Source: Styela clava
Lineage: Eukaryota
DNA length: 64,000 bases
NCBI RefSeq assembly: GCF_964204865.1
Contig: NC_135264.1
Location: 10,664,001-10,728,000 of the forward strand
Direction of reading: 5' to 3'
Each line of letters opens with the position of its first letter. Position 1 is the stretch's first letter. Below, one piece after another: positions 16,768-61,821 of the stretch. A model generated the notes under the pieces. It searched no databases and had not been told where the DNA came from. It was given only the letters and a program-made list of their open reading frames with translations. The translations under genes were made by a program, and so were the position numbers.

Positions 16768-17085
16768 TTATGTCTTTTTAGAGACAAATTTTAACGAGGC
16801 AGAGAATATTCAAAATCGTGATTTGCCATTTGGTCCATTTTTCAAAAATTCATGTCCGAGCTCATTTCCACATTTTGCACAAGAAATTTTTAGTGCAGTT
16901 GGTGATTCATTGTATTTGCTAAGGCTGTCCTGGTGGATCACTTCTGAAAAAGCCGGCCATGGAGACGAATGTTCAAACTTTGAGTTGCTGGAAAATAGCT
17001 CATATTCACATTTTGAGCATGCATAAATTCCGGGCGTGAAATGATCTTTGTATTTTTCGCCATTATTAAATGAACAAAACGACAT
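16768..17085 (-). CDS. MSRB1: Methionine-R-sulfoxide reductase B1 (selenoprotein R/X), 105 aa, Sec at codon 92
   Basis: MSFCSF start, Zn-binding CxxC motifs (CSKC, CAKC), PWPAF and GHEF. Reading through TGA 16812-16810 gives [20 protein letters not shown], matching the vertebrate MSRB1 motif SRFUIFSSSLKFV. The ORF track wrongly stops at the TGA. Confidence 0.96.
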
Positions 17086-25000: not shown

Positions 25001-25480
25001 GAGAATTTTGACATGTCCCTTGCTATTTTGACATAATTTGTATGGGCTGGTTTTATGCCACTGAGGCAACACATAACAGGAAAATGGTCTGTTATGTCTG
25101 AGAGAACTACATGAGATTTGATTCTAAAATTTGAAATATTAGTATAAATGTGATCTATAAGTGTTGATGATGTACTGCTCACTCTAGTAGGCTTAGTGAT
25201 TAATGACTTGGCATTGTGAGAAATTAACATATCGGCATAATTTGCAATTTGGGCATTAGTTGACAATGTAAGTAAGTTAATGTTAAAATCTCCTAGTATC
25301 AAAAACTGTTTCTTTGCCAATTTAGCAAGAGATGCTTCAAATGCATTAGTAAAGCTTGGAATATTATTACGAGGATGCCTATATATAACACCAACAATTA
25401 TCTTATTGACTGCGTTGGCCAAACTTATTTCAAACCATATATTTTCACAGTTGGAGTGATTGAGATTGTAATCTGAAATT
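22025..25480 (-). mobile_element. 5'-truncated CR1/L2-group non-LTR retrotransposon
   Basis: Long ORF2 plus a ~800-nt 3' UTR with a terminal stem-loop (22129-22175) and an (AATCTG)n-like tail near 22025. Boundaries are approximate. Confidence 0.88.
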
Positions 25481-25551
25481 ACAATGTTACCACCAGTCAT
25501 GGTCGTGATAACAGTACTGAAACAGTACCGAAATTGTACTTTGTGCAACAA
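22846..25551 (-). CDS. LINE ORF2: partial APE endonuclease + reverse transcriptase (the TTG start is probably not biological)
   Basis: APE motifs IYRHP, LGDFNI, TLIDHI, TDHFP. RT motifs YRPISILS, QFGF, FLDLRKAFDTV, GVPQGSCLGPLLF, FADD, YKYLG. The N-terminal part of the APE domain is missing. Confidence 0.93.
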   Translation of the reverse strand: MLHKVQFRYCFSTVITTMTGGNIVISDYNLNHSNCENIWFEISLANAVNKIIVGVIYRHPRNNIPSFTNAFEASLAKLAKKQFLILGDFNINLLTLSTNAQIANYADMLISHNAKSLITKPTRVSSTSSTLIDHIYTNISNFRIKSHVVLSDITDHFPVMCCLSGIKPAHTNYVKIARDMSKFSIDCFRTDTQVIFHNYIARNNLSSQNFDGVFSEFVKSFVHLIDRHAPLRPLSRRQKRLRSKPWLTKGLLASIRHKNKMFESHFLKGNTSERSYFKKYRNVLIRAIDDSKQTYYQNLIAKNKGNPRSTWQTVNEITHVKNKSNQKVNEIDIENGSIIRDELLIATEFNKYFSTIGSSLSGKFSTEQDSFKQFLHNCINQSIFMNPATTNELIIEIHNLKDRKAVGPDNIPARFLKLVADLIAPCLAEFFNCSLLFGIFPACLKIARVIPLFKSGNKKCMSNYRPISILSSISKIFERLIHKRLNAFFTKHDVINKSQFGFQNNLSTSHAILDTISYIYDKLERKEFVSATFLDLRKAFDTVNHNILIYKLRHFGIRGTANKLISSYLSNRSQYVQVGSCRSSPLPVTHGVPQGSCLGPLLFLVYVNDITCCSSFFTKLFADDTNLLDSDKSCAVLQLRVNSEIAKVSNWMRSNKLTLNIGKSKTMLISPHQCKSKNETVIQIDDKELENVHSYKYLGIYLDSKMNWDVHLSKLSVKLSKSVGILYKLRRFTSPTTLRMVYYSLFQSHIQYGIIAWGSAVKTVLHRIEIMQNRAIRAISAASYFSRLSPIYYNLQIIKLADIYKIEVLKLMHQHHCKKLPPAFTNYFSKQSNVHSYGTRSSISSSYYVNRFSTKLTQNSIKFVGVKLWNNLPNSIRTSTYNLYKHALKSLYLDAYKPSCN

Positions 25552-43904: not shown

Positions 43905-46900
43905 ATGGAGCCTACTACATCTACAAGGTAAGCGTTAAAAATACTGTAAATATTTTCGATTTTTGCATATATCATCTCGCGAGGAAACACATATAGGGCC
44001 GCTATTTCAATATTGCTCCTCGCTGGAGACTATCCCCAGCGAGCATATCCAGCTCTATTCAAACATATCAAACTATTATATCACACGTCTATAGTTCGGG
44101 CGAGACAACTTTAATTCACGGTCACATAACCACATCAACTAAGCTCGTGCATCGTTCTTGACAGTTTTGGCGTGTAAAGATAAACTTCTGAAAGTATCAG
44201 AGCACAGTTAATATCTTGAACTTCATACAACCTACAGCCTCAAATCGGTTGTGCAGGCGTGATAAATATTTATTTTTCAAATTACACACTCCTTAAACTC
44301 TACATGCGACTTTACTTAATCTTTTTCGGCATGTTGCATGCAATTTGTCCGTCTTCGGCACATGATCTTACCCCTACAATTGATACTTTTATGAGCCGTG
44401 GAGCATACAAAAACTGTTCTTAGACGACAAGTTTCAGCCACAGCACAAATGCCTCGGGTTAATCCCGTTGCCACTTTTTGTTTGAAGTTTTAAATCCGGT
44501 GCATTTTTGCGGAGTAATCTGAGGAATTATGTGCAATTATTGATCCCGTTTTTTATCCCTCCTATCGTTAACTAATCCTAACCTTAAATTTTAATAGCAA
44601 TAAAGCAAGTTGGGCAACTCAAGCCAAATGCATTATTTATGGATATTGTATGTTCCTGACAACATTTTCTCTAATCAAAACAACAGGCGTGTTTTTCATT
44701 CACCTTCAAAATGATTTCGGGGCTTCTGCTGCCCAGGCATCTTTCACTATCAGTTTACCCAGTGCGGTCGTTTTTATGGGAGGTACGTACTTCATGTTTA
44801 TGATATTTTAATTGAGAAGTAATTGGGCTAGTGATCTGAACTAAATCGAATATTTGTACAACGAAAAAGGGGGGGGGGGGGTTACTGAACGCGACAGAAA
44901 AATCATTGAGGCTTTGAACTCCGTGATTTTCAATTTTTACGCAAGTCATAGTAGGCTAATATAAATATGAGAAAATATTTACCTTTAGCATTTTCCACGA
45001 AAGTTTTTTATGAACTTGGGACATTATGCCCGATTTTTTTTAAGCCAATCCTATGAAATATTTCTTGTTTCAGGTCCTGCCTACGGAGCTGTTTTCAATT
45101 CTGCCGGCATTAAACCAACTTTTGCATTAGCTGGAATTTTGATGTTTATCGGGTTTGGAAGCTGCTTCTTTGCATCAAACTTATTTTTCACACAAATTTT
45201 CATGTGCATTGCAGGTAAATATAAATTGCAGGTTTATATAAATACTATAGTTCTATTTGACGGTAAATATTTTTAAAAAAGGTTTGAATTAATTTTTTTT
45301 AGGTATTGGGGCAGGTTTGTCAAATGTGGCAACACTCACTTTGTTGGGGCGGGCATTCTATACAAGCCGCCCAGTAGCACTTGGCGCTCTTGCTATGGGC
45401 GGGGCAACAGCCGTAGCGGTGGGTGGACCAGCTTTACAGTTGTGCATAGACTCGTACACGTGGCGTGGGGCGTTATTGATTCTTGGCGCATATTGTCTTC
45501 ACGGTGTTGTAATCGGATTAGCTTTGGAACCTGTTTATTTGGAGATTGTTAGAAAAAGAGAGACAGCGCTAATTTTGAGAGTCCTCAAATCTCCCGCCAG
45601 AGAAAGGAACTACGAGATTGAAGGTATATATGAAATTTTTGAATTGTTGGAGCCTATTTATTTTCTTATATATACTGAGTTCTAAGTAGTATTTTCTCAT
45701 TTAAATCTCAGAAGATTCTTGTTCAAACGACTGCACATCTAGATCAAGCACAGATGAAGTGTTTGGAGAGGAAAATATTGTATTTGAAGAGCAGCAACGA
45801 ACTTCGACACCGTTTGTTAGTCCTCGTACACGACGACATCAGCGACGCAAGTCTTCAGTCTACGATCGATTTGCTGCTCTCGGAACAAATTTTGCATCAG
45901 TATTTGATGTCAGCTTACTAAAAAATCCTTGGTTTGTCTGCTATTGTCTTTCGTGCGGATTCAGTATAAGTTCAAGAATTTTATCCGGTCTTTATCTAGT
46001 GCGCTATGCACAAGCTTTTGGAATCAACGATCAAGATGCAGCGATGAAATTGACGGTATGTGAAGGAATTTCATTTGCAATGACTCCAGTGATTGGATTT
46101 TTGACAAGCGTGAAGAGAAAAACAAGTAAGAATGTCACTTGAAAAATCGTAGCTGTAACTTATTTTCCCCCTTTATTCAGCAGTTTAGAAGTTCAAAGCA
46201 ACGTAAATTTGGATACATTGTTTTTTTTTTAAACTCAAGGATATTTGTATAAGGTAAAATATTTTCGTGCATCAAGGTCGAAGGGAGGAAAACAAATTCT
46301 TGCAATGGATTCGTATAATAATTTCATCAATAAGACGATCGTATTTACTTGGAAGTTTTCAAATTTTAATGGCAATTGTCATCGCATTTTCAACAATCAT
46401 AACACACAATGAAGGATTTGTAGCATATGCAGCTATGTTAGGATTTTGCTATGGTAAGTAAGAATGTGTCAAGATTAAGCCATCGTAAATGTTTGATTTA
46501 CAATCTCACAGCGGATTTCTAAACTGCATTCCACAGAATCCAACTGGAGTTCAGAGCGCACCTGAAATTACTAATTTCGAAATAATAGGGTATCAAATTT
46601 GATAGGGGGTAAATATGCATTAGTAAAATGACTCACCGCAACGAAACCTAACACAACTGTCGTTCCTGCAACGATAAATACTGTCGCATGGTACACTCGA
46701 GCAACAGAGCATCGCCGCGTGTCAGTTACCATACCCAAAGTAACGTTATAGATGCATTTGTCGACAATCTCAAGTTCATTACATTTTTAGTTGGGTACAG
46801 AATTTGCCCTTTAAAATTGTTCAACTTCCATACGAAGTTATTTGCGTTCTCATAAGCATTCTCATTCTTCTTTCAGGTGGAGTAACTTCTATGACCAACG

Positions 46901-47169
46901 TAGTATTAGCGGACATGTTCGGGACGAAGCAACTTGCCGGTGCGTTCGGTTACAGGTCACTGGCATCGGGAATCATGTTTCTTGGAATACCACCGTCGAT
47001 CGGTTACTTTATAGATATGACTGGTACATATAAAGTGGCACAATATTTTACAGGTACAATGACATTATTAGCTGGCATTTTGACCATTTTAAGCCAAGCA
47101 ATGATACTTCGGAATGAGAGGCTCCTTGACAGAAACAATAATAAAAATGATGACGTAGTTGTCACGTAG
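43905..47169 (+). CDS. Monocarboxylate transporter (SLC16/MCT family, MFS), 7 coding exons
   Basis: Exons 43905-43927, 44598-44782, 45074-45214, 45303-45623, 45712-46125, 46277-46453 and 46877-47169 with consistent phases. MCT-like motifs GVFFIHLQNDFG, F..SRPVALG, YTWRGALLILG, FDVSLLKNPWF, LADMFG..LAGAFG, PPSIGYFIDMTGTY. Confidence 0.88.
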
Positions 47170-48476
47170 CGAGATAAACACGCACACGATCAGCTGAAGT
47201 AATACGGCACGAAATGACGCCATGTAATTATACAATTCGATAAAAACATATGCGTCGGTTAGTCGTGATCCTCCAACAAAAAATGAACTCCGCTACCAAA
47301 AGTGAATGATGTTATCACCATTGCGCTCGCACGAACCAAATTCTTGTTGGTCTGTATACTCGTACGTATTATTTTTTCATTTTATTGTTTTTTTGACAAA
47401 TTGCGCGAAAAAATTAAAGGCGCCAAAACTGGTACATCAAAATTGTTGGCAAAATGGCTCATACGGTACAATTGTATGATCCGAAATTGTTATTGATGGT
47501 CGTTGTATAGTGTTAACACACACGGGCAAACATTTTTTATATTTTCATTTCTTTTTTAAATTTATATTATTTTAACTGTTCAAATTTGAGAACATCGAGC
47601 GTACTTGTATTCAAGTGCTATATAAACCGCCTGTTTATATTCTTAGTTCGTTCGAAAACGTGCTTTATTCAGAATGAAATAATATTGCGGATCTGTCTAC
47701 TTTTATTGCTTAAATTTATGTCCTATATGACTTTTTTTATTATTATTTCTCTGCACTTCCATCTCAGTACGATATTCGTAAACTCGTGCAATAAATAAAA
47801 TGCACTTTCTTATGTTTGCAATGATAAACGGACCTCAAAAGTGATATGGCCTACGTGTGTATGTATGCATGAATGTACTTAAGGTTTCTTCAGGAAGAAT
47901 AATTTTTTGTGATTCTTTTATGAGCATATGCAAAGATGACATGTGCAGGATCGTGATGTTTTTACTTTACCACATTGCTGTCACGTACATTCAAATGGTC
48001 CATCTTTTCGTGACATTCATTCTTCGCATCCATTACGGCATTGCATCCGAGTGTAAACAACATTACCTCAACTGATTGAGGTCGGTAAACTGCCAATTGC
48101 CAAAATGTGTTCGGCATTCCGTTTCTACTTCCAATTATCCATAAAGGGGAAGTAAAGGCGGAAGACGACCTAAAATTAGTTTGGTCGTTCCCAGACTTTC
48201 GACCCCAGAAAAAATGTATTCTTCTACTTTACCATTGCTCATTTTCCAAGCCAATGTTCATAATCACGCCCTAAAATCAGTCGAGTAAAAATATCAGAAC
48301 CACTGCTTAAATTTAATTTGTTACTTATTGCCGATTGGTCAGTGTTAAATGAATAGAGTAACTAGTTAGTTGTTCTCATGCATAGACTTGATAGTGGAGG
48401 AAGCTGTCACGCTGACCACACTACCTACGACAGAGAGGATTCCAGCAATTCTATGGTATATTATTGTTCCCCATGG

Positions 48477-48660
48477 GGCACGAGTGTTCCCAAACACAAT
48501 GCGCCATCAGCCGAGCATGTAGCTACCTATCAGAGGTGCGATGGCACGAGTGTTCCCAAACACAATGCGCCATCAGCCGAGCATGTAGCTACCTATCAGA
48601 GGTGCGGTGGCACGAATGTTCCCAAACACAATGCGCCATCAGCCGAGCATGTAGCTACCT
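48477..48660. repeat. 66-bp minisatellite, ~2.8 near-identical copies
   Basis: Units start at 48477, 48543 and 48609 (GGCACGAGTGTTCCCAAACACAATGCGCCATCAGCCGAGCATGTAGCTACCT...). Confidence 0.95.
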
Positions 48661-51188
48661 GAAACGTACTGCGGTATCGAGTTCTTTCAACATCTGGCAT
48701 GACATAGTACTGGTACAGCTACAATTTTCCGTTGTATTATATGGTACACCAGAAATTTAACTTTCCTGAAATTCATTTCCCACGCGGCTAGATAACTTTT
48801 GTTGAAACAGATTTTCTGATTTCGGAATGTAAATATTCCAATTATAATCACAACAGGACAAGTGAAACAAATACAATCAAAGACGTAGTACAACATGATG
48901 GCAAAAAAGGATCGACTTAAAATTCGCTGTCACATATATCAATTGTTCATAGTATTTTTAGTCCTTGGTTCTGTGCTCGAATACAATACAAAACCAAGGT
49001 GGCCCGAAACCGAGAAATAAGCATGGCCCTTCTATGGCGCACATTTGGTGTGGAAATATGTGTTGATCATAAGTGGTTCCAATATTAGGAAACACTAGAA
49101 ATAATAATTGTAAGAAAACAAGATTAAAATAAAAGATTCTCAACCAAAAAAAGTTGAAGAAAATTAAGATACCTGCATGAAGGTAAAACCATTTTGCATA
49201 TTTGTGGAGTTGAACTGGGAGTATGAAAATGTTCCATAGGAAATAACTGTTATGAAATCAATAATATATGCTACAACTTGATTTAACTTACCCCTTTGCA
49301 CATATATCAACATTGGGTACAGCTATTAAGTTTCGAAAAATAAAAAATTTCCAGGGCAGAAACGTTTACAAAATTTTTATCATCTTAGATGAGAGATGAG
49401 CATAGCGAAGATCAAAAATTGTGATGAAAATAAAAAAGTTTCTGAATCGGTTTAGATGTGAAGTATGTAATACCATTTTGCTACGTACATATCATTGCTA
49501 AATTGTTTCACAAGATAAAAAACAATAAATCAGTAGTATTTATAGAAGCGAAAGTAGTACTTCTTTCAAATAGGAAATGCATTCCAATAATCATTTCTCC
49601 ATTATTAATTAAGAAATTTAATTTAGATTTTGACAGACGGCAACTACATTAACCATATTTGAATACAATTTCCAAGTAGATTTGACTGAAGAACATCTTG
49701 AAAAAAAAAAAAATTAAAAGTGACAGGCATTACTGAAAAATTTCGCTAAAACAAATGAGAGAAGTCAATGTGAAATGATACTTGGTCATTAAAATTTAGC
49801 ATATAGTAAAACTTATACTTCAAAATAATTTCATTTGGAATAATCGATATAAAAAATTATTAAAACATAATTCTGAAATACCTTATTTAAGGACATAGAC
49901 ACAAAAAAGTGGAACTATAAGACAGGGATAATGGTCACTAACATTTTTCAAATAGTATCATCTTGAAGAAAAAATCGACAATTTTGATTTATATAAACAA
50001 AAAATTAAATACAGTATATGGAAAAATAATATTTCAGCACACATTTGATTGTGCAAATTGTTAACAGGGTACCTGAGATTATTTCTCAATAAATATGATA
50101 TTGATTCTTAAAGATGAAAAAATGGACAATGTTACGACAAGATGCAATCAAGTGCCAATTGGTCCTTGTATACTAAGTAAACTCCATATGCCACAACCTA
50201 TGGTATACCTAAGTAAGCAAAAATAACATGATCCACTTACATTAGGTTGCAAATTAATGTAATTATATTCAAAGTCAGAGCACAAAAATTGTGCTATATG
50301 TGTTCCAAATTGATAAAAGGGATATTATCTTTTGGTGACAAGCAACTAAATTTTGTGCCAATTTAAAATAAACAATTTGATATTAAATTCAAATCAATTT
50401 TCTGCAGGTCATCATCTAGTTTCACTCTTTTTATTTCTATCATATATTTGTTTTTCGTAACATGTAAAAATATACAAAACAAAATGACATCTGGAAGTCT
50501 GGAATGGTTCAGCAATAAAGATATAAATAGATTATATGTGTCTGCATTATTTATAATGTCTTGGTCTCAATCTTGGTCTCAGTCACAATAAGAAAAAGGC
50601 ATTTCAAAAACACGAGACTGAAATGATAGGAAAAGACTCTAGATGAGAATAAGACCAATTGATTGTTTTTGTTTTTTCTCCAAAAGCAGCTCTGTATATA
50701 TAAATAGTCATTCAGACTAAGGGACTATGCGGGTCTGGCATATGCTGTTTATATGTTTGACGATATTTACACCTACAAGATTTCATAAAGCATTCGAAAA
50801 TTATAGTAAAATACACTTGAAGTTCATTGCTCATAAAAGTACAAATAAATAAATTAAATAATGAATCTTAATAATAATCATTAAATATGAGAACAATGAA
50901 ATTTTACAGATCAGCTTTTTTGTATTTAGCTCAAAAACATATAAAATATGAGATTCTCTTTCGAACACAAAAACATTACTAGCGGAGAACATAGTCAGGC
51001 GTTAAAATGATTATTTTGTAGCAGCTCAATATGGATGTTTGTTTTCATAGATAGTTAAAGGTATGTGAAGAGAAGTGCAGATATAAAAAAAATAACCAAA
51101 TTTTACTGGCATTTATAAAGTAAATCAACTTTCAAAATATGCTGTTTGTTTCAAGGCCGAGATGATTAATTTAATGATTACCCCAAAT

Positions 51189-51558
51189 CAGGGGTGTGCA
51201 ACCTTTAATACAAGAGGGCCAGATACAAATAACTGGGTGAAACCGAGGGCCGCACTCTCATTTAATATAGGCTTTCTAGTAGTTGCAACACAAACATTTT
51301 GACTATCGATCTTATGACATGCATTGTTCGCTTCGCACAAGCTAGCTATTAGGGCATTGTAACGTCATAGACTCATAGGCATAGATAATAAATTGGACTC
51401 AGGAATATACTTTGTAACGCAGAGGGGTTGGAATTACTCACACGCACCAGATTAAAAACTCGTTTCAGGTGCCGCGTACCATTCAAAATTGGCACTTCTA
51501 CACAAGCCGCACAATTTTTCTTGTGGGCCGCATTTGGCCCACAGGTTGCACATCCCTG
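51189..51558. mobile_element. hAT-Charlie-like MITE
   Basis: TIRs CAGGGGTGTGCAACCT and AGGTTGCACATCCCTG, GGGCCG subterminal motifs, imperfect 8-bp TSD (CCCCAAAT / CCCTGAAT). Confidence 0.82.
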
Positions 51559-52193
51559 CCCTGAATCGCATCAAAACTGTTGCAATTTTAGAAAAGGCCT
51601 TTTCAATTTGTTTAACTATATAACAAGGCATAATCACCATGAATGTGTGCGTAAAAATACACGATTTCAGAAACGGCCCATTGTTAAATAGAAACGATAT
51701 TTCTATACCCTGTCATAAAAACATGATGAAGAAAAAGGAAGTTGAATATACAGGATGTTCAAAACCGGCGTCACATTTTTATACAATGCCACATTCAAAC
51801 ACAAAATCAATTATTAAATCTGATATTTTAAATGGAATAAATATAGTCTAAGCTCCATATATAATTTCATCGCTTTTTTAAGTATATGTAACACTTCAGG
51901 TTTTTTTTAAAAAACGAGGGAATGTTGAAATTTCTGAGAAAATTTGATTTTAAACAAGTTCTTTTTAAGTTGGTCTAGTATCAAGTTTGAAAACCAATTA
52001 TATACTTTCTCCTTAATTTTTCTAACTCCCTATTTTTTTTTTTTCAGTTTTTTTCGCCGATTTGGGTTGAATCCAGCACTTATTTTTTTATTGTTAATCA
52101 TATACCTAAATAGAAAAGCATCAATGATAATATAAAATTTCAATTTTTCTAAATTTTAAGCAGTCACAAAAATAATGGGTCATGGAAATAAGG

Positions 52194-55100
52194 TTATATG
52201 ACAGAATCATTCTCTTGCATATCACCTTTGTCATATTCCGTATTCGAATTTGTTTGAATTATTTCTGTGCGTAATAGTCATTCTTTGTGCTTCTTTAATT
52301 TTTTCGTTATAGAAAACACACGAATGCCTAAGTGCTCAGCTAGCTGGTCGACCTAAACACAGAAGGAAATTAAATTGGAAAAAGTTTGTCACTTTTTAGT
52401 TGTGTTTCCTAAATTTTAACTATAAATCAAAATCAAAGGTCGTTTTGTCTTCCGAAAAGTTTTAGTTTAATTGCAAAGCAGTAATCAAAATATATTTCCG
52501 AAAAAGCTGCGATAGATTAGGTTAAAATTAGGTATCAGTACTTTTGAATGCGAATGGCAAATACCTTATTCTAATTGATGAATCATATCGCTCGGTGTTA
52601 TGGCGCATCGTGCCAAGCGTTAGGAATCTGCTCACCACCGCATCCCAGATTAACTTGCGGGGATTCGCAGGTTCGAATCCCATGTGGGGTTAATTATGTA
52701 CAAAAGGATTGCTGGACTCCTTGCCGGTGGTTCGCGTAACCGCAAGTTGAGTACTACTTCCTCCACCATCAAGTCCATACGTCCGAAAAAACTTGCTAAC
52801 TAATCTTGTACCCGACATGGACTGGTAACCGGACGAGAGGCCGTGGTTCGCCGTATAATAAGGCCATTTTATCGGCTTTCCTCTTTCCCAGATAAATATG
52901 TAAATCCTATCCTATATAAATCAGTTTGTAAGCTCCAAACACAAGTAATAACACAGTATATATATATATTGTCCAGTTTGTGGACAATAGATTGTCACAA
53001 GTTTTTTTGCCATGTTTATCCCAGACTAAATAACACAAACTATTCTGTTAACTTACCACGACTACTCCGTAATGAATGTGCAACAGTACCAGTGAGACGG
53101 TAAGAATTTTGAGGCACCAAGATTCAATCGTGGCATCACCAAAGAATAATGAGACAGAAACAGCACAGAGCAATGGCATAATAAGAAAATTGAAGACCTG
53201 GCATCTACTGTTTGACATCTGGCTTACAATGAGTCGACACTGTAAATAAATAGAAAAGGAAATTCATGAGTATATATATATTAACTGAAAAACAAAACAT
53301 CAACAACTAAAAACAAATTTTAATTAGAATACAAAACTGGAAAAAGTATTAATAAAATAGATCTCTAACATTGGAAAAAGTGATTTAAAACTGAAAAAGT
53401 AATAAACACTCATGGACTCACTCGGCAATCATATCCTTAACCTACTATGAAATGTACTCAAATTAAATACTATCAAAATTATTTGTTTTAAGAGTCACAG
53501 AAAAATAAATATTTGTTCTCTAAATATAACTGATAAATCTCTTTGATTGGTTGCCACGTGTAGCGTGAGATTGCTAAACTGAACTTTAATCTGTGGTTTT
53601 GCTGGACTTTGAATTGTTCTGAACTCTGATTACAGAATGCTTAGTCTGCATTAAATTTTATGAAATTCCCCACAATTGAAAAAGTATGTGCACCAAGGTG
53701 GCGGACACTGTAACGTAGTATGTGTACCAGGTTAAGGTTGGGCCATAATTTCAGGTACAAATACTACGGGAGTCACTTGGCTAGTCCCCGAACTCGTGAT
53801 ATTACTTTAATTGAGGAAAATTGGAATAAAATTATGGCCTAACCCTAACCTGGTACACATACTTCTGGAACGCCAAATCGTGTAGTTATTTTCAATGACC
53901 TTCTGCTGTTATCTAATTACTAATGATTAGTTTGAAAACAGTTGAACTGCAGGTGTCACATATGCATGACAATCGGGTTACAATTAATTGGGTTTATTTT
54001 ATTTCTCTACCATTATGACTCCTCTATCGCCACTGTTGCACGACCAGTCAGAACAATCTCATCATAAAATGCAAAAGCAAGTGCTGCCATGTTTCACTAA
54101 CTGGGATGTGAGGCTATGATTCTGATCCAACTGTAGTTATACACTTTTGTTTGAGTTTTCAAAATATATCATATTATAAGGGTTTGAATGAATAATTGAT
54201 GAACTTTTCTAATATAACAATTCTAAAGTATTCTTAAATTCAAAACACTTTAAATTTAAAATTTCAATTTTGATATCCAAAACCTTATTGGACATGTCTG
54301 CTTACTTATATGATGTAAAAAATCATCTTATCAAATCGTGCCTGTAATCATTGCCTACAGGTATGTGTCAAATGCTGTCAAAAATTGTCATGACTTTAAG
54401 CAGTTAAAACACAAGAATTGAAAGATAATATATGCATACAAAGATAACAACCCTGCGTTTCAAATAAAAATAGTAACCCACCACAATATTTGATAGAATA
54501 ACCCCAACAGCCGTTAACATCCATCTTGGACTCTGATGTAAAATATTTCCAGGTGAAAAAAAACACCATGTTGTGAACAATACAAAGACAATAACGGATG
54601 AGAATAATGGAATAAACGCCTCGTACATGCTTCTCATTTTACCAGTCTTGTCTACGTAAGATCTGTAAATTAGAAAGGAAATTTTTATCAAATACATAAA
54701 TTTTTTCTCAAGTAAATATTAGGAAACATTTTGTGAATCTTTCGGGAGTGGATATTGAATTATTAATATGAAGTGTGATACAAGGTAGATCTCTTGGGCC
54801 TCATTTCTTTTATATATGTATAGCTTAGTCAGCATAGTATACCTTGAATTTCCAACATAAAGCGTAATACAAGGTAAATTCCTTGGGCCTGACTTCTTAT
54901 TATATTTATAGTTTAGTCAGCAAAGTACACCTGTCATCAGCCTGTTTGGTAGACAGTAACCCAATTTATACTAATTACTATGAAAAAGGGTTTTCAATAT
55001 TCATTAAAAGAGGTAGTAAATTCCGGTAAGATGATCGTCTGTCTGTTGCCGGTTATGGGAAGAGTTAACCAGCTCATCACTGAATGCACGTTGATCGCAT

Positions 55101-58100
55101 AGTAAGCTAAAATCGACCAGGAGTTATGTGAAACCATTGTACAACAATGATAGAAGTCGAGCAATCCACTCATTCCACCTAAAATTCTACCCTGCAAATC
55201 TGCATAACCACTATTTTAGAGTAAAATACTTTTAAGATACTATTTATCACTTTGCTTGATAAAAACTCGATAACATTCTCACCTATAAACATTGTAGAAG
55301 CAGACTGGCATTGAGAACAAAATTCCAGAAGCTAAAAATAAAAAATACAATACTTAGCAAATAAGCAATATATTGGTTTGCGATCTTTTTGGTGGGGCGG
55401 GAACCCCACTAACGTTCCAGAGGTTCGAGGAACCCTTGCACAATAGTTTCATTGTCTCTTATTGTCTGAATAGTATAAACTATAAATATATATATGGGAG
55501 CAAACCTAACACGGAAAAAACAAATTGATCTTCCAAGTGTAGCAAATTTAATAATTATGGCAAACGTTATGGGTATTTAATTTTATTTAAACAATATAAA
55601 CTCTCATATTTAAATGGAAACTTGCAGAATCCATGCCTGTACTGGCAGAACCCTGTGGTGCCACGGAACAACAGTTTAGGACCATCGATTTATAACCTCA
55701 TGGGCTGAAGCTTTGGAGACCCCTGGACGAAATTTTGAGTTGATTTAAAACTATACATTTACGAACATGATATGTAATTTTAAATTTAATTCCTAATATA
55801 ACTCACTTCAGAAATAAAATAGGTCCAATTTCTGGTCGAGTATGCATTATTATCAACTTTGTGAAGGGCCTATATACTTACCATATAAAATAACCAAAAT
55901 GTATTCTCTAATTTTGATTCCATAAATATCCGCTCTCCAGATCTCAGTCCCGAAAAAAGCACACATTGCGTACGCAAGAGCCATTACCTAAAGTAGGTAT
56001 TAAAAAGTTGAAAATGAGTTAGTTACTTCCAGCTTGATGTATTTTCTCCCCTAAAACTGAATGAAAAATGAACTAAATAACACAAACTATAACAAATCTT
56101 AAACGCTCCAAAATCCAATTTTTATAAATAATCAGTTGATTTTGAAAAGACAGCAAGTCCTAAATAATATAGTCATAAATGCAACCAGCAAACATTGGCT
56201 AACGAAACATTCGAAGCGTACATATAACAGTTGGTACACATTGGAAAAGACAATTTCAAGTTTTTGAATTCTGTACTCTTTCAATGAAACATCTATAATT
56301 TGGGCCAGTATTCGGCCCTCTGAGAAATATTTTGTGCCCTAGACTGGCTCATCTAATATTTCGCTGCTATGAGTACATCCCATATCTACGGTATATGAAT
56401 ATAAAAAGATTAACACATTATATGAATTATCCGAAAATGCTATAATACCAATATTAATAGTATCTTTTCAAGATTGTTGTGGTTGAAGGTTATTATTTTT
56501 TTTACTCACCACTTGACTAAAATCATATGACCATGGTAAGTATAAGATGCCAGTGTTATATTTCTCCCAGTGACAGAGTAGGAAACAAGTCATCAACATC
56601 CATAACACAGCATAGAATTGCCAAGCTGCAAGATACAATAGATAATGAGTAAAGATGATAAAAAACGCGGGTTTAAGACGAACCACAACCGATTGACACT
56701 GATATTTTGCTATAAAATGGTAAACATTACTTGGAGGCGTTGAAGCTGTTAATAAAAAAAATGTTTGGCAAGCGCGATCAGAAAGTTTGTTTGAATTAAT
56801 TGAGATGAAAACATATTGGTTGTAAAAATATCGTACGACCGGAATTATATTTTGTATTTTGTTTGATTGTATGTGACGGATATTATTTCAGCTATATTTG
56901 AGTTTTCATATTTTGATTTATAGCATTCGTTAAAAAAAAAGAATTCACTGTATGTATCGTCCATGCTAGGGTAGGGGACCTCATTTGTAAATAACTGGCT
57001 AATTATTTCTCATCAAATGTTTTTGTGTAAAACTTAAATTATCTTCAGATATGTTTTATATTCAACATTAACTTTAATTAATTCAAGTTTTTATATCAAC
57101 CAGTGTTTGCGTTTGCTTGTAATTTTTCTATTGATCCTCTCTACCATGATTGATTACTTACGAGAGAACTAGCTGGGGACAACAGCCTGGCACACAAAAA
57201 CGTTAAGAATTTAATTGATATTATAGATAGGTAGCTTCCTCCAGAAGAAAAGTAATCAATCATAAGATAGATTTGCTATTGATAAAATGTCATTTATCGT
57301 GATGTCACACGTCAGTACAAATGTACAAGGGATTTGACATAGTTGTCAATATATCAAGATATTGATACTCGAGAATTTTTTTTTCAAGCACAACAAAAAG
57401 TAAAACACAAACTACGTTTTAGATGTATGGAATTTGAAAAGATTGTACTCAAACCTACTCCAAACAAGATGTTTGACCATATTATTCTGCTCAAGCACAC
57501 CTTGTCTGAAGCATTGTCATGAGTGCTTGACTGACGAGCAGAGAAACAAGTATCACAATTTTTAAGTCTCTGCATTTGAGGTGAATATATTGTGAAGCTC
57601 TCATTTTTTGTGCTAAAAAATGACCTCAGCTTTTTTGCTGAAAAATATGGTATTTTTTCTTTGGATATATGATTTTTAACATATCAAAATAATATATGAC
57701 TACTTTTAATTTCGTAGAAGCAAGGTCATAAAATCTTACCGGAAGCTCCACATTCTCCTCTACCAAATATTGAATAAATTCCAAAAGCAAACATAGAAAC
57801 ACACCAAGAATCTATACCATGATCAAATAATTCACCCATGGGCGAAGATGACCCCGTTCTTCTGGCTTGTTTCCCATCACAGCCATCTAAAAAGTAAGAT
57901 TATGAAGTTGAGGTGGAACATAGTAAAATGTTATATGAACTTAATTAAAGCCAATTTTCATATTTGTCATTGTGGTTACTGATTAGCCAGCTGTATTAAA
58001 CCTTGTTTGCACAAGACGTCAGTTGTGTCAAGTTGAAACACTATGTGAAAATATACTCAAACACTGATTTAAGAAAAATTATGTCTCCGATTCTGAGGTG

Positions 58101-61100
58101 TGAAAAATTTTGACTTCGAGTCTGGAGCGTAAAAAGGTTTGACTTCGACTCTGAAGGAAGAGAAATTTTGACTTTGACTCCGGAGCGAGAAAAAGTTTGA
58201 CTTCGACTCCGGAGCGAGAAAAAGTTTGACTTCGACTCCGGAGCGAGAAAAAGTTTGACTTCGACTCTGAAGGGAGAAGAATTTTGACTTGACTCTGAAG
58301 CAAGAAAAAGTTTGACTTCGAGTCTGAAGCGAGTCTTCAACTCACGAATGTACAAAAATTTTGACTTTGAGCAAAGTTTGACTCCGACTCACGAGTTCAG
58401 AAAGATTTTGACTCAGACTCTTGAGTTGAAAAAAGTTTCGATCAGTAATCAGTAATCAGTAGTTTATTTCTCACCATACTTAAAATAGGCACAAACATAC
58501 AAATTGCAATAAATTAAATTATAAATTGGCCATATTTCAGGGTGAAGGAGACGCGAGAAACCAATACTGGTTATCGAGCAGCGGCACCTATAAAATAAGT
58601 CTAACACTATAATTTAAAAAACAAAAAAACGAACTAAGTTTAAATAAATTGAGGAAAAAAATACATAAAATATCTCGAGACGATCTGCTGTAACCAGCAA
58701 TCGCTCGCTTCAACCAAAGTGACTATAATAGTCACTTAGGCTTCAACAAAAGAAAAGACAACTCCGAACACCACTGATTCGGTAGCCATGGAGATGGCGT
58801 TAGTGGATTGTATCACAACAATGCTATTGTGATGCCCATTAGCTAACAATGGGCAATAAATGTCAAATTCTGATGGCGCATGGTTATTGGTTACAGTGGA
58901 ACCCATGGTTTGCTGAGGGCGACAACAGGATCAGCAACGAATAAACCATACCTTTATGCTAGAAAGGAATTGAGGTACCTGTTAATGGGATCTAGTGATT
59001 GGCAGCTGGAGTCAGGGCTTCACATAACGTTACAGGATATATAAAATCAGGGAAGACATGAAATATCAAAATGTGAAAGATATTCCATAACAGTCATTCA
59101 AAATGAATGTAACCTAGTATCAACATTCACAGTGGGAAACTAGATAGACTACAAGACATGAAACAGCAAAACTAAGAAGAGTCAAGTACCGTAGTCTAAT
59201 AGTTGAGTGAACCAATGAAGCAAAGTTTAAAAGTACATAAAGCAAATATTATTTATCAGGTAATACTTTTACAATGTTATATAAGAGTATAATGACAATC
59301 AGATAAACAATTTAGGCTTTACTGACTGCAAGAGAAAACAAGTCACAATGTTATGCTAATTAACCAAGATCTTGAGCAGATGGGCTTAGAATTTCAATGT
59401 GGTTAAATTCGTACAAAGCTTCATGAACCATCTCAAACATAAGAAAAGTAGTTTACTATATTGTGCAGGTTACGAACAAATACAGGTCATGCAATTAGCA
59501 TGGCACACTTTACATAATTCAAATCACTGGCAAGAATGCAATAAGATAAGGACATGAAAAAATTGAAAAAAAAAAAAAGTATTATTATTACAGGTATAGG
59601 CCTAGCGGAGCAAGCGGGAAAGAGTGCCGAGGCCACATCATTTGGATGCAATCACAGCAGACTGGTAAGGTGACAGCAAGAATTTTTTATATTTTGTTTT
59701 GAAAGTTTCATAAGAAGAGTCACGTAAGATTTGGGGAATACTATTCCAAATTACAACACCCTTATACTTCAAGGAGTTTTGGGACTTGCTTAGCGAAAAT
59801 CTGGGAACAAAAAAATTTGATTTTGTCGAAGAGCGTGTGTTATGCTCATGCACATTACTGAGAACAGTGAAATAATCAGCGAAAGCTGCAGGCAATTGGT
59901 TGTTGTGGAACTGGTGCATAATCTTAGAAATTTCTAATTTATAGATGTCAGACAATTTTAGCACCCTGGCTTTATGATATAGGGTGTTTATGTTTGTACG
60001 AACTGGTGCTCCGGAGAGAATTTTAACAGCCCTATTTTGTAAAATCTCTAATTTACGCAAGCTAGTTTGAGTAGCGGAGCCCCATGCAGCTAAGGCGTAT
60101 TGGATATGTGATTGAAAAAGAGCAAAGACTCTCGAATTGAGAAAAATTTCGTCTACAAGTCTGAGTTGAGAAAAATTTTGACTCAGACTCTTACTTGAGA
60201 AAAACTTGTCTCTAACTCTAATAACAAAAACTAAGGTATATATAAGCCTTCTTCGATATACTGTTGAGAAAGTTTAATTAGACTTGATGCTATATAAAAT
60301 TTTGGACCCCTTTTATCACCAATGAAATCTGATTTTCGGCTCAGGCTTCGAGGAGCTTAATAAAAATAAAAATCTGGCTCCGGTCTTGTACCTAACCCTT
60401 TCGATTATCGCTTATTAAGTACTCAAAACAAACCTAGATCTTACCAAGAGTATGCGAGAAGAATTGTGTGAATACACATAGCCACCAAACCCACGCTGGT
60501 ATGGGTGGATATTCAGTAAATTCACTAGCTGATGCATACCAATATGGGTCATAAAATGTCAATACTGCAGTTTGTAAAACGAGGAGTAGAAATCCGCTGA
60601 ATGTCATCAAATTTGGTGCTACCCATTTTGGAAATATCTAAAAATAAAATTTACAGTGATGATTGTCTCTTTTTTAAAAAAAAACCATAAAGGTAGCAAG
60701 CATATTTAATGCTCATCAAACAGGTTTCATGTGGAAGGACATGAAAAATTTAATTTATATTTACCTTCACAAACTGGTTCCAGAATGGGTGCATGACATA
60801 ATTTGACAAGGGTGATGTGTCGATACTGCTGTACTAAAAATTAAGAATATTAAAAAATTTTGAAGTCTTTTTTACTGTGTTAGTAAATCAGTTATGACTA
60901 AACACTGAAAGTACAAAAGTGTCATGAGTCGGCAACCTACGACCTGCAGCCAGGCTCTTTAAAAATGATGTATAGTCAGGTGGGGGTTAGAATGACGTAT
61001 GCAAAAATGGTTATGCTGCCCCAACTAGAAGTACTTGACGGCGTTTAGTGAACTAGCCCCTTTAGTTCGTATATTAAGGTATAATCAAGACAATATTGCA

Positions 61101-61821
61101 AACTGAATGCGTTTTGTTAACAAGAAAGAATTCCTTAGGTGAAAATACCTGCGACCCGAACCTAACCAAAGGTTGCCATCCCTGGTCTATATTAACATAA
61201 CAAGGTATGAATTTGAGGGTAGGGTAAGCATGCCCAAAAGCAGAAAACTGTAGTGACACTTAATCCCCGCCTTTCCAGTTTTAATCATCTGGTGAAAATC
61301 CGGGTCTCATGTAGTTTCGTACCTAACATACTTCTAGTGGGCTTAGCATAACAATTTTTTCACGTGTCAATCCTAACCCCCACCTGACCACACCATCCAA
61401 AAATTACGTCACTACGACATCAGAGTGACGTAATAGAGCCCTTCAAACTATGCGAACTGTCATCCAAGACGCGCAGACGAGAACCCGAAATTGAACAGCC
61501 ATTTCTCTCGTTTTCTCGTCGCAACGATCCCGATAGGAGAGGGATCGCTGATCGTTGGCGCCGATGCCATTTCGGGCGATCGTACGAGAATTTGGCAAGC
61601 TCTATGACGTGATTGTGACGTCGTAGTGACGTAATTTTTGTATGGAGTAGTCAGGTGAGGGTTAGGATTGGCATGTCAAAAAGTTGTTATGCTACGCCTA
61701 CTAGAAGTACGTTAGGTACGAAACTACACGAGACCCGAAAATCCTTGTTGAAAAAGATACAAAGAAAACAACCAACCTTGTATGAATCAAATCCAGCCAG
61801 TTCATCGTCGGTTATATACAT
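52194..61821 (-). CDS. SELENOI: Ethanolaminephosphotransferase 1 / selenoprotein I orthologue, 10 exons; 387 aa if TGA 52280-52278 is a stop, 415 aa if recoded
   Basis: Exons 61821-61777, 60833-60765, 60637-60445, 57886-57740, 56625-56510, 55987-55882, 55331-55283, 54662-54482, 53239-53057 and 52352-52278 (or 52194), all GT-AG and in phase. CDP-alcohol phosphotransferase motif [30 protein letters not shown]-type segments [43 protein letters not shown] and [11 protein letters not shown]. Gene identity is confident; recoding is not. Confidence 0.92.
52589..52915 (+). mobile_element. Full-length tRNA-derived SINE in the last SELENOI intron
   Basis: A-box-like TGGCGCATCGTG, B box GGTTCGAATCCC (~52670), body shared with 27008-27272, CCTATCCTAT tail. 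Confidence 0.87.
53683..53873. mobile_element. Second copy of the palindromic MITE at 37514-37733
   Basis: Shares GGCGGACAC..AACGTAGTATGTGTACCAGGTT, CTAGTCCCC and AAATTGGAATAAAATTATGGCCTA. Confidence 0.8.
58090..58440. repeat. 29-bp tandem array (TTTGACTTCGACTCCGGAGCGAGAAAAAG), continuing at ~60126-60220 beyond a LINE insertion
   Basis: About a dozen variably diverged units. Similar units resume directly after the LINE fragment. Confidence 0.9.
58441..60125 (-). mobile_element. Heavily 5'-truncated CR1/L2-group LINE (ORF2 C-terminus + 3' UTR) in SELENOI intron 3
   Basis: [52 protein letters not shown] aligns with the C-terminus of the 22846..25551 ORF. 3' stem-loop at 58541-58588 and a (GATTACT)n tail at 58441-58460. 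Confidence 0.88.
61302..61736. mobile_element. Long-TIR MITE (possibly MULE-like) in SELENOI intron 1
   Basis: Imperfect TIRs of ~135 bp beginning GGGTCTC and ending GAGACCC, with a perfect 8-bp TSD GAAAATCC (61294-301 and 61737-44). A partial relative lies at ~60970-61035. Confidence 0.88.

What the first reader, a model, noticed from the sequence alone, without database searches (positions are those of the whole stretch)
52194..52352. SELENOI/EPT1 orthologue with an in-frame UGA-CUA at the vertebrate Sec position, a 27-codon open extension and no obvious SECIS
Seen: the last exon reads [57 protein letters not shown]. The TGA is codon 388 of my 10-exon model and is followed by CTA. Knowledge (from memory): human SELENOI ends ...FSLRKPNSD-U-LGMEEKNIGL with Sec at about residue 387, also followed by Leu; Sec-containing SELENOI is generally described as vertebrate-restricted; UGA-CUA(G) is a well-known stop-readthrough context. 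I scanned ATGA/GTGA starts on the minus strand down to ~48200 and found no canonical SECIS. Inference: this is either a non-vertebrate Sec-SELENOI with a distant or atypical SECIS, or SECIS-independent readthrough that could be the ancestral state from which the vertebrate selenoprotein arose. A plain stop after a Lys-rich tail remains possible.
Basis: partly seen in the sequence, partly recalled or inferred. Interest (0 to 1): 0.85.

Follow-up and report, generated by a model that had tools for sequence, protein, structure and literature searches.

The report
Conserved leaky UGA stop in EPT1
The sea-squirt gene for ethanolamine phosphotransferase (the counterpart of vertebrate selenoprotein I) ends with a UGA that has no selenocysteine signal behind it, but the same acidic-residue/UGA/CUA arrangement recurs in distant animals including an ant that cannot make selenoproteins, so the vertebrate selenocysteine codon probably grew out of an old, leaky stop codon.

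Summary
The last exon (window 52352-52278, minus strand) ends ...KKHKE-TGA-CTA-TTA, then 27 sense codons and TAA. TGA is codon 388 of a 10-exon EPT1/SELENOI model. Alone this is not remarkable: 16-18% of TGA triplets here are followed by 27 or more open codons, and 1.9% by CTA.

Selenocysteine is not supported. The genome has tRNA-Sec and textbook SECIS elements. My scanner recovered 11 of 11 control SECIS. Yet Rfam, the scanner and two covariance models trained on this genome found no credible SECIS in the 6 kb downstream.

The new result is comparative. EPT1 loci from metagenomes use TGA as the stop in 13 of 16 lineages. Four of these share [D/E]-TGA-CT[A/T]-Leu with Styela, in the column where vertebrates have [D/E]-Sec-Leu. 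One is the ant Atta cephalotes, which has no Sec machinery. Its 7-codon extension is conserved in frame with another locus, while the flanks are not.

Most likely this is an ordinary stop in a conserved, weak UGA-CUA context, probably with low-level non-Sec readthrough. It is plausibly the ancestor of the vertebrate Sec codon. The RNA evidence for the 3' UTR is ambiguous.

The parts
61777..61821 (-). EPT1/SELENOI exon 1 (ATG at 61821; [15 protein letters not shown])
   Evidence: ORF listing. tblastn to orthologues. Best GT-AG model.
60765..60833 (-). exon 2
   Evidence: tblastn. Model.
60445..60637 (-). exon 3
   Evidence: tblastn. Model.
57740..57886 (-). exon 4, holding the CDP-alcohol phosphotransferase motif DGxDGKQARR...GELFDHGxD
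   Evidence: Pfam PF01066 scores 21.6 bits for the exon alone. PDB CHPT1/CEPT1 matches at E about 2e-8.
56510..56625 (-). exon 5
   Evidence: tblastn. Model.
55882..55987 (-). exon 6
   Evidence: ORF. Model. This is the least well supported boundary.
55283..55331 (-). exon 7
   Evidence: Weak tblastn hit. Model.
54482..54662 (-). exon 8
   Evidence: tblastn. Model.
53057..53239 (-). exon 9 (CRLIVSQMS...HIHYGVVV)
   Evidence: tblastn. Single copy in the genome. This exon was the query that fetched the 20 metagenome loci.
52281..52352 (-). exon 10 coding part, 24 codons ending KKHKE
52278..52280 (-). UGA, codon 388: the stop codon of the gene. It aligns with the vertebrate Sec column.
52272..52277 (-). 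CUA UUA (Leu-Leu if translated): the weak-termination 3' context shared with L025, L028, L029-31 and L037
   Evidence: UGA-CUA-UAC and UGA-CUA-GUA give readthrough in a reconstituted system (bioRxiv 10.1101/2021.04.18.440353).
52194..52277 (-). 27-codon open extension plus TAA (52196-52194)
   Evidence: The length is within chance. Beyond the first 5 codons there is no similarity to the other lineages.
52165..52269 (-). predicted long-range stem starting 11 nt after the UGA, with an inner hairpin. Its role is unknown.
   Evidence: MFE -22.3 kcal/mol, z -2.10, 6 of 200 shuffles fold as well. The structure is not shared by the other loci.
52087..52092 (-). first AATAAA after the coding region, 102 nt past the TAA. 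It would give a 3' UTR of about 210 nt from the UGA.
   Evidence: Read directly. Its use is not shown.
48900..52094 (.). non-coding stretch present in presumed RNA assemblies at exon-like depth. It is either a long 3' UTR isoform of this gene or of the convergent transporter gene, or a separate RNA.
   Evidence: contigs of 4 runs cover it at depth 20-60 and introns are at 0-6. Three contigs end exactly at 52094. The strand cannot be told from contigs.

Best explanation
This is the single-copy Styela orthologue of ethanolaminephosphotransferase 1 (vertebrate SELENOI). Its UGA at 52280-52278 is the normal termination codon, not a selenocysteine codon. Most ribosomes stop there and release a 387-residue enzyme ending ...KKHKE.

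The codon sits in a termination context (GAA-UGA-CUA-UUA) that is conserved in EPT1 genes of distant animals and is known to terminate poorly. A minority of ribosomes therefore probably decode the UGA with a near-cognate tRNA (Trp, Cys or Arg) and add a tail that begins Leu-Leu. No SECIS is needed for this.

The vertebrate Sec codon, which also lies between an acidic residue and a Leu in the same alignment column, is most simply this same ancestral UGA. It would have become a Sec codon once a SECIS arose in the 3' UTR.

Shown: the gene model; the absence of a detectable SECIS; the shared motif; the excess of TGA stops; the conserved extension in the ant/L028 pair. Inferred: that readthrough happens in Styela, that it is selected, and that the two codons are homologous.
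For: Gene identity.
- The 10-exon, 387-codon model scores 523.8 bits against an HMM of EPT1/SELENOI proteins.
- The catalytic motif is in exon 4.
- The gene is single copy.

Not Sec.
- The genome has tRNA-Sec at 79.6 bits.
- It has canonical SECIS elements behind GPx, Rdx and SelW-like genes.
- My pattern scanner recovers 11 of 11 of these, including 5 that Rfam missed.
- In 46000-52400 on the gene's strand the scanner gives one atypical hit: apical region 44 nt against 11-20 nt in real elements, AA spacing 13 against 10-11.
- Rfam finds nothing at E<=10.
- The best covariance-model hits are at noise level: 17.7 bits, E 0.26 and 17.2 bits, E 0.77. That hit lacks the invariant 3' GA and folds no better than shuffles, z +0.52.

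Conserved context.
- Of 16 EPT1 lineages with readable ends, 13 stop with TGA.
- Five of those 13 continue CT[A/T], binomial p about 9e-5; four continue CTA, p about 7e-5.
- All five have D or E just before the TGA and Leu after it, as vertebrates have [D/E]-Sec-Leu.
- L029-31 is Atta cephalotes: the neighbouring RRP40 gene is 99% identical. Hymenoptera lack Sec machinery (PMC4561486).
- No SECIS was found in any of these loci.
- L028 and Atta share TGA plus 7 codons plus TAA with 20 of 27 bases identical and no gaps. Random 27-mers from the same 3' regions give 13.6 +/- 2.2, maximum 18 of 300.
- In that pair a TTG/CTT Leu change is synonymous. The 7 codons before the TGA (52% identical) and the sequence after the TAA (45%, gapped) are less alike.

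Known mechanism.
- UGA-CUA followed by UAC or GUA gives readthrough in a reconstituted mammalian system.
- UGA-C is the leakiest context in flies (PMC13278127).
Against: - No close relative of Styela could be compared, so nothing shows that its own 27 codons are under coding constraint.
- Beyond the first 5 codons the extensions of the five lineages are unrelated (17-32% identity). Their lengths are 5, 7, 7, 27 and 27 codons.
- The Styela TGA is 3 codons off the vertebrate Sec position without a gap.
- The family pattern was noticed after the fact. The lineages are not all independent, and three of them are of unknown taxon.
- L037 shares an 8-base string with Atta, but one base out of frame. 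That fits RNA-level similarity or chance better than peptide conservation.
- The RNA assemblies do not clearly cover the last exon in 3 of 4 runs, so the 3' UTR is not defined.
- MSRB1 in the same window is clearly a Sec gene ([13 protein letters not shown]), yet Rfam and my covariance model see no SECIS there. Negative SECIS results are therefore not absolute.
Confidence: 0.5

Rival explanations
1. This is a plain stop codon with no selected readthrough. The 27-codon open frame is chance, and the shared [D/E]-TGA-CTA-Leu is a coincidence of a small, partly related sample, or reflects some constraint unrelated to decoding the UGA.
For: - Open extensions of at least 27 codons follow 16-18% of TGA triplets here.
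- Extension sequences and lengths are not conserved between phyla.
- EPT1 proteins of sponge, anemone, tick, moth, mite and others end within a few residues of this point (20-29 residues after the H-x-H-Y-G-x motif). The stop is therefore where the family normally ends.
- No paper or supplement searched lists EPT1 or bbc among readthrough genes.
Against: - TGA in 13 of 16 lineages (p 1e-4 to 1e-2, depending on the null).
- CT[A/T] after the TGA in 5 of 13 (p about 1e-4).
- Bases just after a stop are not expected to survive from ant to sea squirt without selection.
- The L028/Atta extension is conserved in frame with a shared second stop, while its flanks are not.
Confidence: 0.33
2. The UGA encodes selenocysteine, directed by a SECIS that is atypical, lies beyond the region searched, or sits after a 3' UTR intron. 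Styela would then have a true Sec-SELENOI.
For: - The genome uses Sec.
- The UGA aligns with the vertebrate Sec between an acidic residue and Leu.
- The 3' UTR may be longer than 3 kb.
- MSRB1 in the same window shows that a real Sec gene can lack a SECIS that Rfam or my covariance model recognise.
- The best covariance-model hit of the whole window, on either strand, falls on the right strand 2.9 kb downstream (49329-49397).
Against: - That hit lacks the invariant 3' GA, is an all-A/U helix, scores at noise level (E 0.77) and folds no better than shuffles.
- No other candidate was found in 6 kb by four methods.
- The same motif exists in an ant without Sec machinery, and without a SECIS in 5.7 kb downstream.
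- Nothing after the UGA resembles the vertebrate tail beyond the first Leu.
- The literature finds no Sec form outside vertebrates (PMC13134290, PMC3316567).
Confidence: 0.07
3. The gene model is incomplete at its 3' end. An alternative last exon or alternative splice would replace or bypass the TGA-containing end, so the codon would matter only in a minor isoform.
For: In 3 of 4 presumed RNA runs the last exon has no depth while the region below 52094 does.
Against: - The last exon matches orthologue tails residue for residue ([13 protein letters not shown] against VSSLAKHLGIKVF in P0055).
- It follows a canonical AG acceptor, and the preceding exon ends at a GTAAGT donor.
- One run covers exons 9 and 10 at the same depth as the downstream region.
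- The tool warns that dips in depth over conserved genes are not findings.
Confidence: 0.05

Closest known systems
Vertebrate selenoprotein I (SELENOI / EPT1)
   Same: It is the orthologous enzyme, with the same catalytic motif and the same 10-helix-type layout. The C-terminal tail is collinear up to an acidic residue, followed by UGA and then Leu.
   Different: Vertebrates decode the UGA as Sec with a SECIS and add a conserved tail of about 10 residues (L-G-x-E-E-K-N-I-G-L). Styela has no detectable SECIS, a 3-residue longer linker before the UGA, and an unrelated 27-codon open frame after it.
Hymenopteran SPS1-UGA (non-Sec readthrough of a UGA at a Sec position; Mariotti et al. 2015, PMC4561486)
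   Same: A UGA is conserved in the column of a selenoprotein's Sec codon. It has no SECIS and occurs in animals that cannot make Sec, Atta cephalotes among them. It is read as evidence for readthrough without selenium.
   Different: In SPS1 the UGA is internal and followed by hundreds of conserved codons, a GGG-UG[C/U] hexanucleotide and a conserved structure. Translation is hard to doubt there. Here the UGA is the terminal stop, the extension is short and poorly conserved, and the context is CUA.
UGA-CUA(G) stop-codon readthrough genes of animals, and UGA-C leaky contexts of insects and alphaviruses
   Same: The stop codon and the next three bases are the same. The stop codon's identity is conserved across species, which is a hallmark of readthrough genes.
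   Different: The base after CUA is U in Styela rather than G, although CUA-UAC also works in vitro. No measurement exists for this gene in any species.
Selenoproteins that arose by C-terminal extension (animal thioredoxin reductase -GCUG tail; from my own knowledge)
   Same: It is the same idea: a Sec residue gained at the very end of an existing enzyme by extending translation past the old end.
   Different: For thioredoxin reductase no conserved ancestral UGA stop has been pointed out. Here the candidate ancestral codon is still visible in living invertebrates.

Membership tests
EPT1 / SELENOI orthologue (CDP-alcohol phosphotransferase, ethanolaminephosphotransferase 1) | CDP-alcohol phosphotransferase motif D-G-x2-A-R-x8-G-x3-D-x3-D | tested here: met
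   Exon 4 reads [26 protein letters not shown]. Pfam PF01066 scores 21.6 bits against a cut-off of 22 for this 48-residue exon alone. PDB CHPT1/CEPT1 matches at E about 2e-8.
EPT1 / SELENOI orthologue (CDP-alcohol phosphotransferase, ethanolaminephosphotransferase 1) | Full-length collinearity with EPT1 rather than with the CEPT1/CHPT1 paralogues | tested here: met
   All ten exons align in order to proteins named ethanolaminephosphotransferase 1 or selenoprotein I. The local HMM score is 523.8 bits. The gene is single copy. The joined model was scored only in a local script and was not sent to any database.
Eukaryotic selenoprotein gene | SECIS element (AUGA ... AA ... GA kink-turn hairpin) in the 3' UTR | tested here: not met
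   Rfam at E<=10. Pattern scanner validated on 11 of 11 SECIS of this genome. Covariance models R1 and R2 with filters off. The best hit, 49329-49397, lacks the 3' GA and has fold z +0.52.
Eukaryotic selenoprotein gene | In-frame UGA aligned with the Sec (or Cys) of known family members | tested here: inconclusive
   It falls in the same MAFFT column as vertebrate Sec, but only with a 3-residue gap. The flanks [D/E] and Leu are shared. The same column holds the ordinary stop of many invertebrate orthologues.
Eukaryotic selenoprotein gene | Protein-coding conservation downstream of the UGA | tested here: inconclusive
   There is no similarity to the vertebrate tail or to other lineages beyond Leu-Leu. 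No close relative was available (look-up of encoding contigs closed).
Eukaryotic selenoprotein gene | Sec-decoding machinery present in the organism | tested here: met
   tRNA-Sec at 79.6 bits. UGA-containing GPx, SelW-like and MSRB1 genes, most with a SECIS.
Programmed stop-codon readthrough gene | Weak termination context (UGA followed by C, best UGA-CUA) | tested here: met
   UGA-CUA-UUA. The context is known to be leaky.
Programmed stop-codon readthrough gene | Stop codon identity and context conserved across species | tested here: met
   TGA in 13 of 16 lineages. CT[A/T] next in 5 of the 13. C at +4 in 7 of the 13.
Programmed stop-codon readthrough gene | Coding-type conservation of the extension up to a conserved second stop | tested here: inconclusive
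   Met for the L028/Atta pair: 20 of 27 bases, no gaps, a synonymous Leu change, a shared TAA, and flanks that are not conserved. Not testable for Styela's own extension. L037 shares bases with Atta out of frame.
Programmed stop-codon readthrough gene | Direct evidence of translation past the stop (footprints, peptides, reporter) | not testable with these tools
   Only assembled contigs of presumed RNA runs were available.

The most novel reading that the evidence does not exclude
EPT1 carries an ancient, selected, leaky UGA stop ([D/E]-UGA-CUA-Leu) that predates the split of arthropods and chordates and yields a minor C-terminally extended isoform without selenium. Vertebrate selenoprotein I was born when a SECIS appeared downstream of this pre-existing recoding site. 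Its Sec codon would then be a converted stop codon, and invertebrate homologues do 'include the Sec position', contrary to the current view.
Probability: 0.3. Interest if true: 0.8.

Novelty: new variant of a known kind. Interest (0 to 1): 0.6.

Why it matters
SELENOI is singled out in the literature as the one vertebrate selenoprotein family with no outside homologue covering the Sec position (PMC13134290). Its Sec-containing tail has no known function or origin (PMC3316567).

If the invertebrate stop codon is the same codon, kept as UGA in a leaky context across phyla, that gives a concrete and testable route for how a selenoprotein is born: a SECIS is captured behind a stop that ribosomes already read through. 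It would also add a conserved readthrough candidate in a core phospholipid-synthesis enzyme, alongside the SPS1-UGA precedent.

If the pattern dissolves with more genomes, the Styela codon is simply the normal stop of the gene and the finding is ordinary.

Tried and rejected
SECIS searches.
- Rfam SECIS models on 44000-53000, the whole window, and 50300-52400 found nothing. Rfam also missed 5 real SECIS of this genome, so it is weak on its own.
- My first two scanners were too strict and were replaced by the third.
- Covariance model R1 was overfitted to flanks. Independent real SECIS scored only 16-22 bits with it, so I rebuilt it as R2 from 11 elements.
- Candidate 49329-49397 is rejected: no 3' GA, an A/U-only helix, and its AUGA is paired elsewhere in the MFE fold.
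- Candidate 52234-52165 is rejected: 44-nt apical region, weak helix, and the fold is not SECIS-like.

Searches for relatives.
- The exon-9 search of the protein database was blank because of the tool's length limits.
- PDB was blank for exon 9.
- Scans of genome contigs and viral contigs were blank.
- The protein atlas gave no usable taxon for L025.

Literature.
- No record of EPT1 or bbc readthrough was found. One paper id was not held.

Resemblances considered and dropped.
- The mite tail S-P-E-Q-E-N-L-G-K against the vertebrate E-E-K-N-I-G, and Styela's terminal M-Q-E-N. These are too short to test.
- The equal 27-codon length in Styela and L037. Identity is 0.32 beyond codon 5, which is chance.
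- A common RNA structure after the UGA. It is present in Styela (z -2.1) and as a hairpin in L025, but absent in Atta and L037.

RNA runs.
- The share of words held cannot tell presence from polymorphism. Contig depth over the last exon is zero in 3 of 4 runs, and the tool warns that such dips are not findings.
Full report
**What is in the sequence.**
Window 52352-52194 on the minus strand reads 24 codons ending K-K-H-K-E. These are followed by TGA (52280-52278), CTA, TTA, 25 further sense codons and TAA (52196-52194).

Six-frame reading and tblastn with orthologous proteins show ten collinear exons between 61821 and 52278. I enumerated GT-AG combinations and scored them locally against an HMM of 14 EPT1/SELENOI proteins. 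The best model has 387 codons before the TGA and scores 523.8 bits. The joined model was used only inside that local script.

Exon 4 carries the CDP-alcohol phosphotransferase motif. Pfam PF01066 gives 21.6 bits for the exon alone, and solved CHPT1/CEPT1 structures match at E about 2e-8. The gene is single copy in the 377-Mb assembly. Earlier notes of this scan call the genome Styela, a sea squirt. I did not verify the name.

**Is the feature more than chance on its own?**
No. On this strand 15.6% of TGA triplets in the non-coding 47200-52190 stretch, and 17.7% in the whole window, are followed by at least 27 open codons. 1.9% of TGA triplets are followed by CTA.

**Position relative to vertebrate Sec.**
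A search of 1.84 billion representative proteins with exon 4 returned full-length orthologues, including a bird 'Selenoprotein I' (P0042, named).
- Of about 115 vertebrate sequences, 97 end exactly 23 residues after the conserved H-x-H-Y-G-x motif. They are cut at the Sec codon.
- Sequences that run on show ...K-P-N-S-D-[Sec]-L-G-M-E-E-K-N-I-G-L.
- Styela has 26 residues before its TGA.
- MAFFT places the Styela TGA in the Sec column with a 3-residue insertion in the Lys-rich linker.
- Invertebrate EPT1 proteins end 20-29 residues after the motif. These come from sponge, sea anemone, tube worm, tick, moth, mites, a filarial nematode and Seison. The commonest end is 23 residues.

So the TGA lies where the family ordinarily ends, and the vertebrate Sec codon lies at that same point.

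**Selenocysteine.**
The organism uses Sec.
- tRNA-Sec scores 79.6 bits.
- GPx, Rdx and SelW-like genes carry in-frame TGA.
- MSRB1 in this very window reads [13 protein letters not shown], like vertebrate MSRB1.

Rfam's SECIS model found six elements genome-wide, all behind GPx or Rdx genes. I wrote a pattern scanner that requires four things: an A/G-UGA core, a helix II of at least 8 pairs, an unpaired AA at the right spacing, and a 3' GA. It recovers those six elements plus five others that Rfam had missed. That is 11 of 11. The real elements are compact, with AA spacing of 10-11 nt and an apical region of 11-20 nt.

The results for 46000-52400 on the gene's strand are:
- The scanner gives one hit at strict settings (52234-52165). 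Its AA spacing is 13, its apical region is 44 nt, and its fold is not SECIS-like. The background rate is about one hit per 2.2 kb.
- Rfam finds no SECIS at E<=10, even when only 2.1 kb is searched.
- A covariance model built from six SECIS of this genome was overfitted.
- A second model from eleven elements gave 17.2 bits, E 0.77, as its best hit in the whole window, at 49329-49397.
- That hit has the 5' AUGA and AAAC at the right spacing. It lacks the invariant 3' GA, has an all-A/U helix, and folds no better than shuffled sequence, z +0.52.

I conclude that no credible SECIS lies within 6 kb.

There is a caveat. Neither Rfam nor my model detects a SECIS for MSRB1 either. Only the pattern scanner gives a compact GUGA...CGAA candidate there. 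A negative result is therefore strong but not absolute.

**The 3' UTR.**
A convergent transporter gene ends at 47169 on the plus strand. This bounds the space available for a 3' UTR.

Assemblies of four presumed RNA runs of the same organism cover 48900-52094 at depth 20-60, while introns are at 0-6. In one run, exons 9 and 10 have the same depth as this region. In the other three runs those exons are empty. Three contigs end exactly at 52094, two bases before the first AATAAA.

Contigs carry no strand, and the tool warns that dips over conserved genes are not findings. A long 3' UTR, a UTR of the convergent gene, or a separate RNA all remain possible.

**The comparative result.**
A scan of metagenome contigs with exon 9 returned 20 loci that encode EPT1 relatives at 35-52% identity. 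I read their C-terminal ends either directly or across the last intron. Counting obvious duplicates once, and adding Styela, gives 16 lineages.
- 13 stop with TGA. The exceptions are two TAA and one TAG.
- Five of the 13 have the same arrangement:

| Lineage | End of coding region and what follows |
|---|---|
| Styela | E-TGA-CTA-TTA |
| L025 | D-TGA-CTA-GCA |
| L028 | D-TGA-CTA-TTG |
| L029/30/31 | E-TGA-CTA-CTT |
| L037 | E-TGA-CTT-TTG |

- All five fall at the Sec column or within one residue of it.
- With the base composition of the Styela 3' region, CT[A/T] after 5 of 13 TGA stops has binomial p about 9e-5. CTA after 4 of 13 has p about 7e-5. TGA in 13 of 16 has p between 1e-4 and 1e-2, depending on the assumed TGA share.
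- These numbers are inflated. I saw the pattern first and tested it afterwards, and the lineages are not fully independent. Bases next to a stop codon are nevertheless not expected to persist between phyla without selection.
- L025 is the most vertebrate-like. Its tail is ...F-R-I-D-R-P-S-S-D against vertebrate ...F-S-L-R-K-P-S-T-D. Its context is TGA-CTAG, and an 11-bp hairpin starts 6 nt after the stop codon.

**An animal without Sec has the motif.**
The gene next to L029 encodes RRP40 that is 99% identical to that of Atta cephalotes. Hymenoptera have lost the Sec machinery and selenoproteins. Even so, they keep a UGA at the Sec position of SPS1, which is thought to be read through without Sec (PMC4561486). 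The motif is therefore not diagnostic of Sec.

None of the five lineages has a SECIS. My scanner and model found none in 0.5 to 5.7 kb downstream, and Rfam found none in L025, L028 and L037.

L028 is only about 55% identical to Atta in exon 9. Even so, the two share TGA, seven codons and TAA:
- L028 reads L-L-D-D-S-A-Y and Atta reads L-L-A-D-D-A-C.
- 20 of 27 bases are identical, with no gap.
- Random 27-mers from the same 3' regions give 13.6 +/- 2.2, and none of 300 reached 20.
- The second Leu is TTG in one and CTT in the other.
- The seven codons before the TGA are only 52% identical.
- Similarity disappears after the TAA.

That is the usual signature of a translated extension. Against this, L037 shares the string TTGCCGAC with Atta one base out of frame. 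Beyond the first five codons the extensions of different lineages are unrelated, at 17-32% identity.

**Mechanism.**
UGA followed by C is the leakiest stop context in animals (PMC13278127). UGA-CUA followed by UAC or GUA lets ribosomes take one more elongation step in a reconstituted mammalian system (bioRxiv 10.1101/2021.04.18.440353).

The most economical reading is as follows. The Styela UGA terminates most ribosomes. The conserved weak context lets a minority insert a near-cognate residue and continue with Leu-Leu. Vertebrates converted this same codon into a Sec codon by acquiring a SECIS.

My odds are:

| Reading | Probability |
|---|---|
| Conserved leaky stop with non-Sec readthrough | about 0.50 |
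| Plain stop with a coincidental pattern | about 0.33 |
| Sec with an undetected SECIS | about 0.07 |
| Wrong 3' gene model | about 0.05 |

**Against the literature.**
[quoted passage not shown] It is also said to have a Sec-containing C-terminal extension with no Cys-form homologues (PMC3316567; also PMC3473315). I found no paper that points to the invertebrate stop codon as the counterpart of the Sec codon, and none that lists EPT1 among readthrough genes. The closest precedent is SPS1-UGA.

**Limits.**
- Three of the four non-Styela lineages are of unknown taxon.
- No experiment can be replaced by these data.

Noticed in passing
window 16749-17133 (-), downstream to about 16340: MSRB1 reads ...[21 protein letters not shown]-stop, matching the vertebrate Sec-MSRB1 flanks, so it is a real Sec gene. 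Neither Rfam nor my 11-element covariance model sees a SECIS behind it. Only a compact GUGA...CGAA candidate at 16390-16347 turns up, and it does not fold as a SECIS in the MFE (z -0.48).
   Followed up: partly
L010, L011, L013, L014 (20-40 nt 3' of the SECIS); L012 (immediately 5' of the AUGA core): A shared decamer CTTGTGCATT (mostly continuing CG) lies next to five SECIS elements of GPx and Rdx genes on different contigs. It is the same strand sequence, not a complement. Its role is unknown: it could be a 3'-end signal, a trans-splice signal, or part of a duplicated unit.
   Followed up: no
G000 C8:16426481-16443136 (L042-L044): Three tandem SelW-like (Rdx) genes about 8 kb apart. Each has an in-frame TGA and a near-identical SECIS with a CGAA 3' core. 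All three were missed by Rfam's genome-wide search.
   Followed up: partly
L025:539-580: This is the metagenome EPT1 locus with the most vertebrate-like tail (R-P-S-S-D-TGA-CTAG). An 11-bp G/C-containing hairpin starts 6 nt after the stop, the usual place for a readthrough stimulator. The coding region is free of introns across what are five exons in Styela. The taxon is unknown.
   Followed up: partly
L027, L035, L032: Three EPT1 lineages outside the CTA class have a second in-frame TGA at once or after one codon (TGA-TGA, TGA-TGA, TGA-GAG-TGA). This is the pattern expected of back-up stops behind a leaky stop. The sample is too small to test.
   Followed up: no
window 52528-52700 (last intron), 51067-51657, 53628-54021: A tRNA-derived SINE-like element lies in the last intron, and there are two other repeats. 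All three have RNA-assembly depth in the thousands, far above the gene itself.
   Followed up: no
window 48378-48760: A tandem repeat of about three units gives overlapping repeated ORFs (...S-V-P-K-H-N-A-P-S-A-E-H-V-A-T-Y-Q-R-C...). It lies inside the transcribed non-coding stretch downstream of the gene.
   Followed up: no
window 22846-25551 (-) and 11867-13814 (+): An intact-looking 901-residue reverse-transcriptase ORF of a LINE-type element, and a two-ORF pogo/Tigger-like transposase. The transposase lies between MSRB1 and the sequence further downstream.
   Followed up: no
P0089, L039, L040 (sarcoptiform-mite-like EPT1): These tails run past the usual end with a conserved S-P-E-Q-E-N-L-G-K. 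This loosely recalls the vertebrate post-Sec E-E-K-N-I-G, with a Lys codon near the Sec column. It is too short to call homologous.
   Followed up: partly
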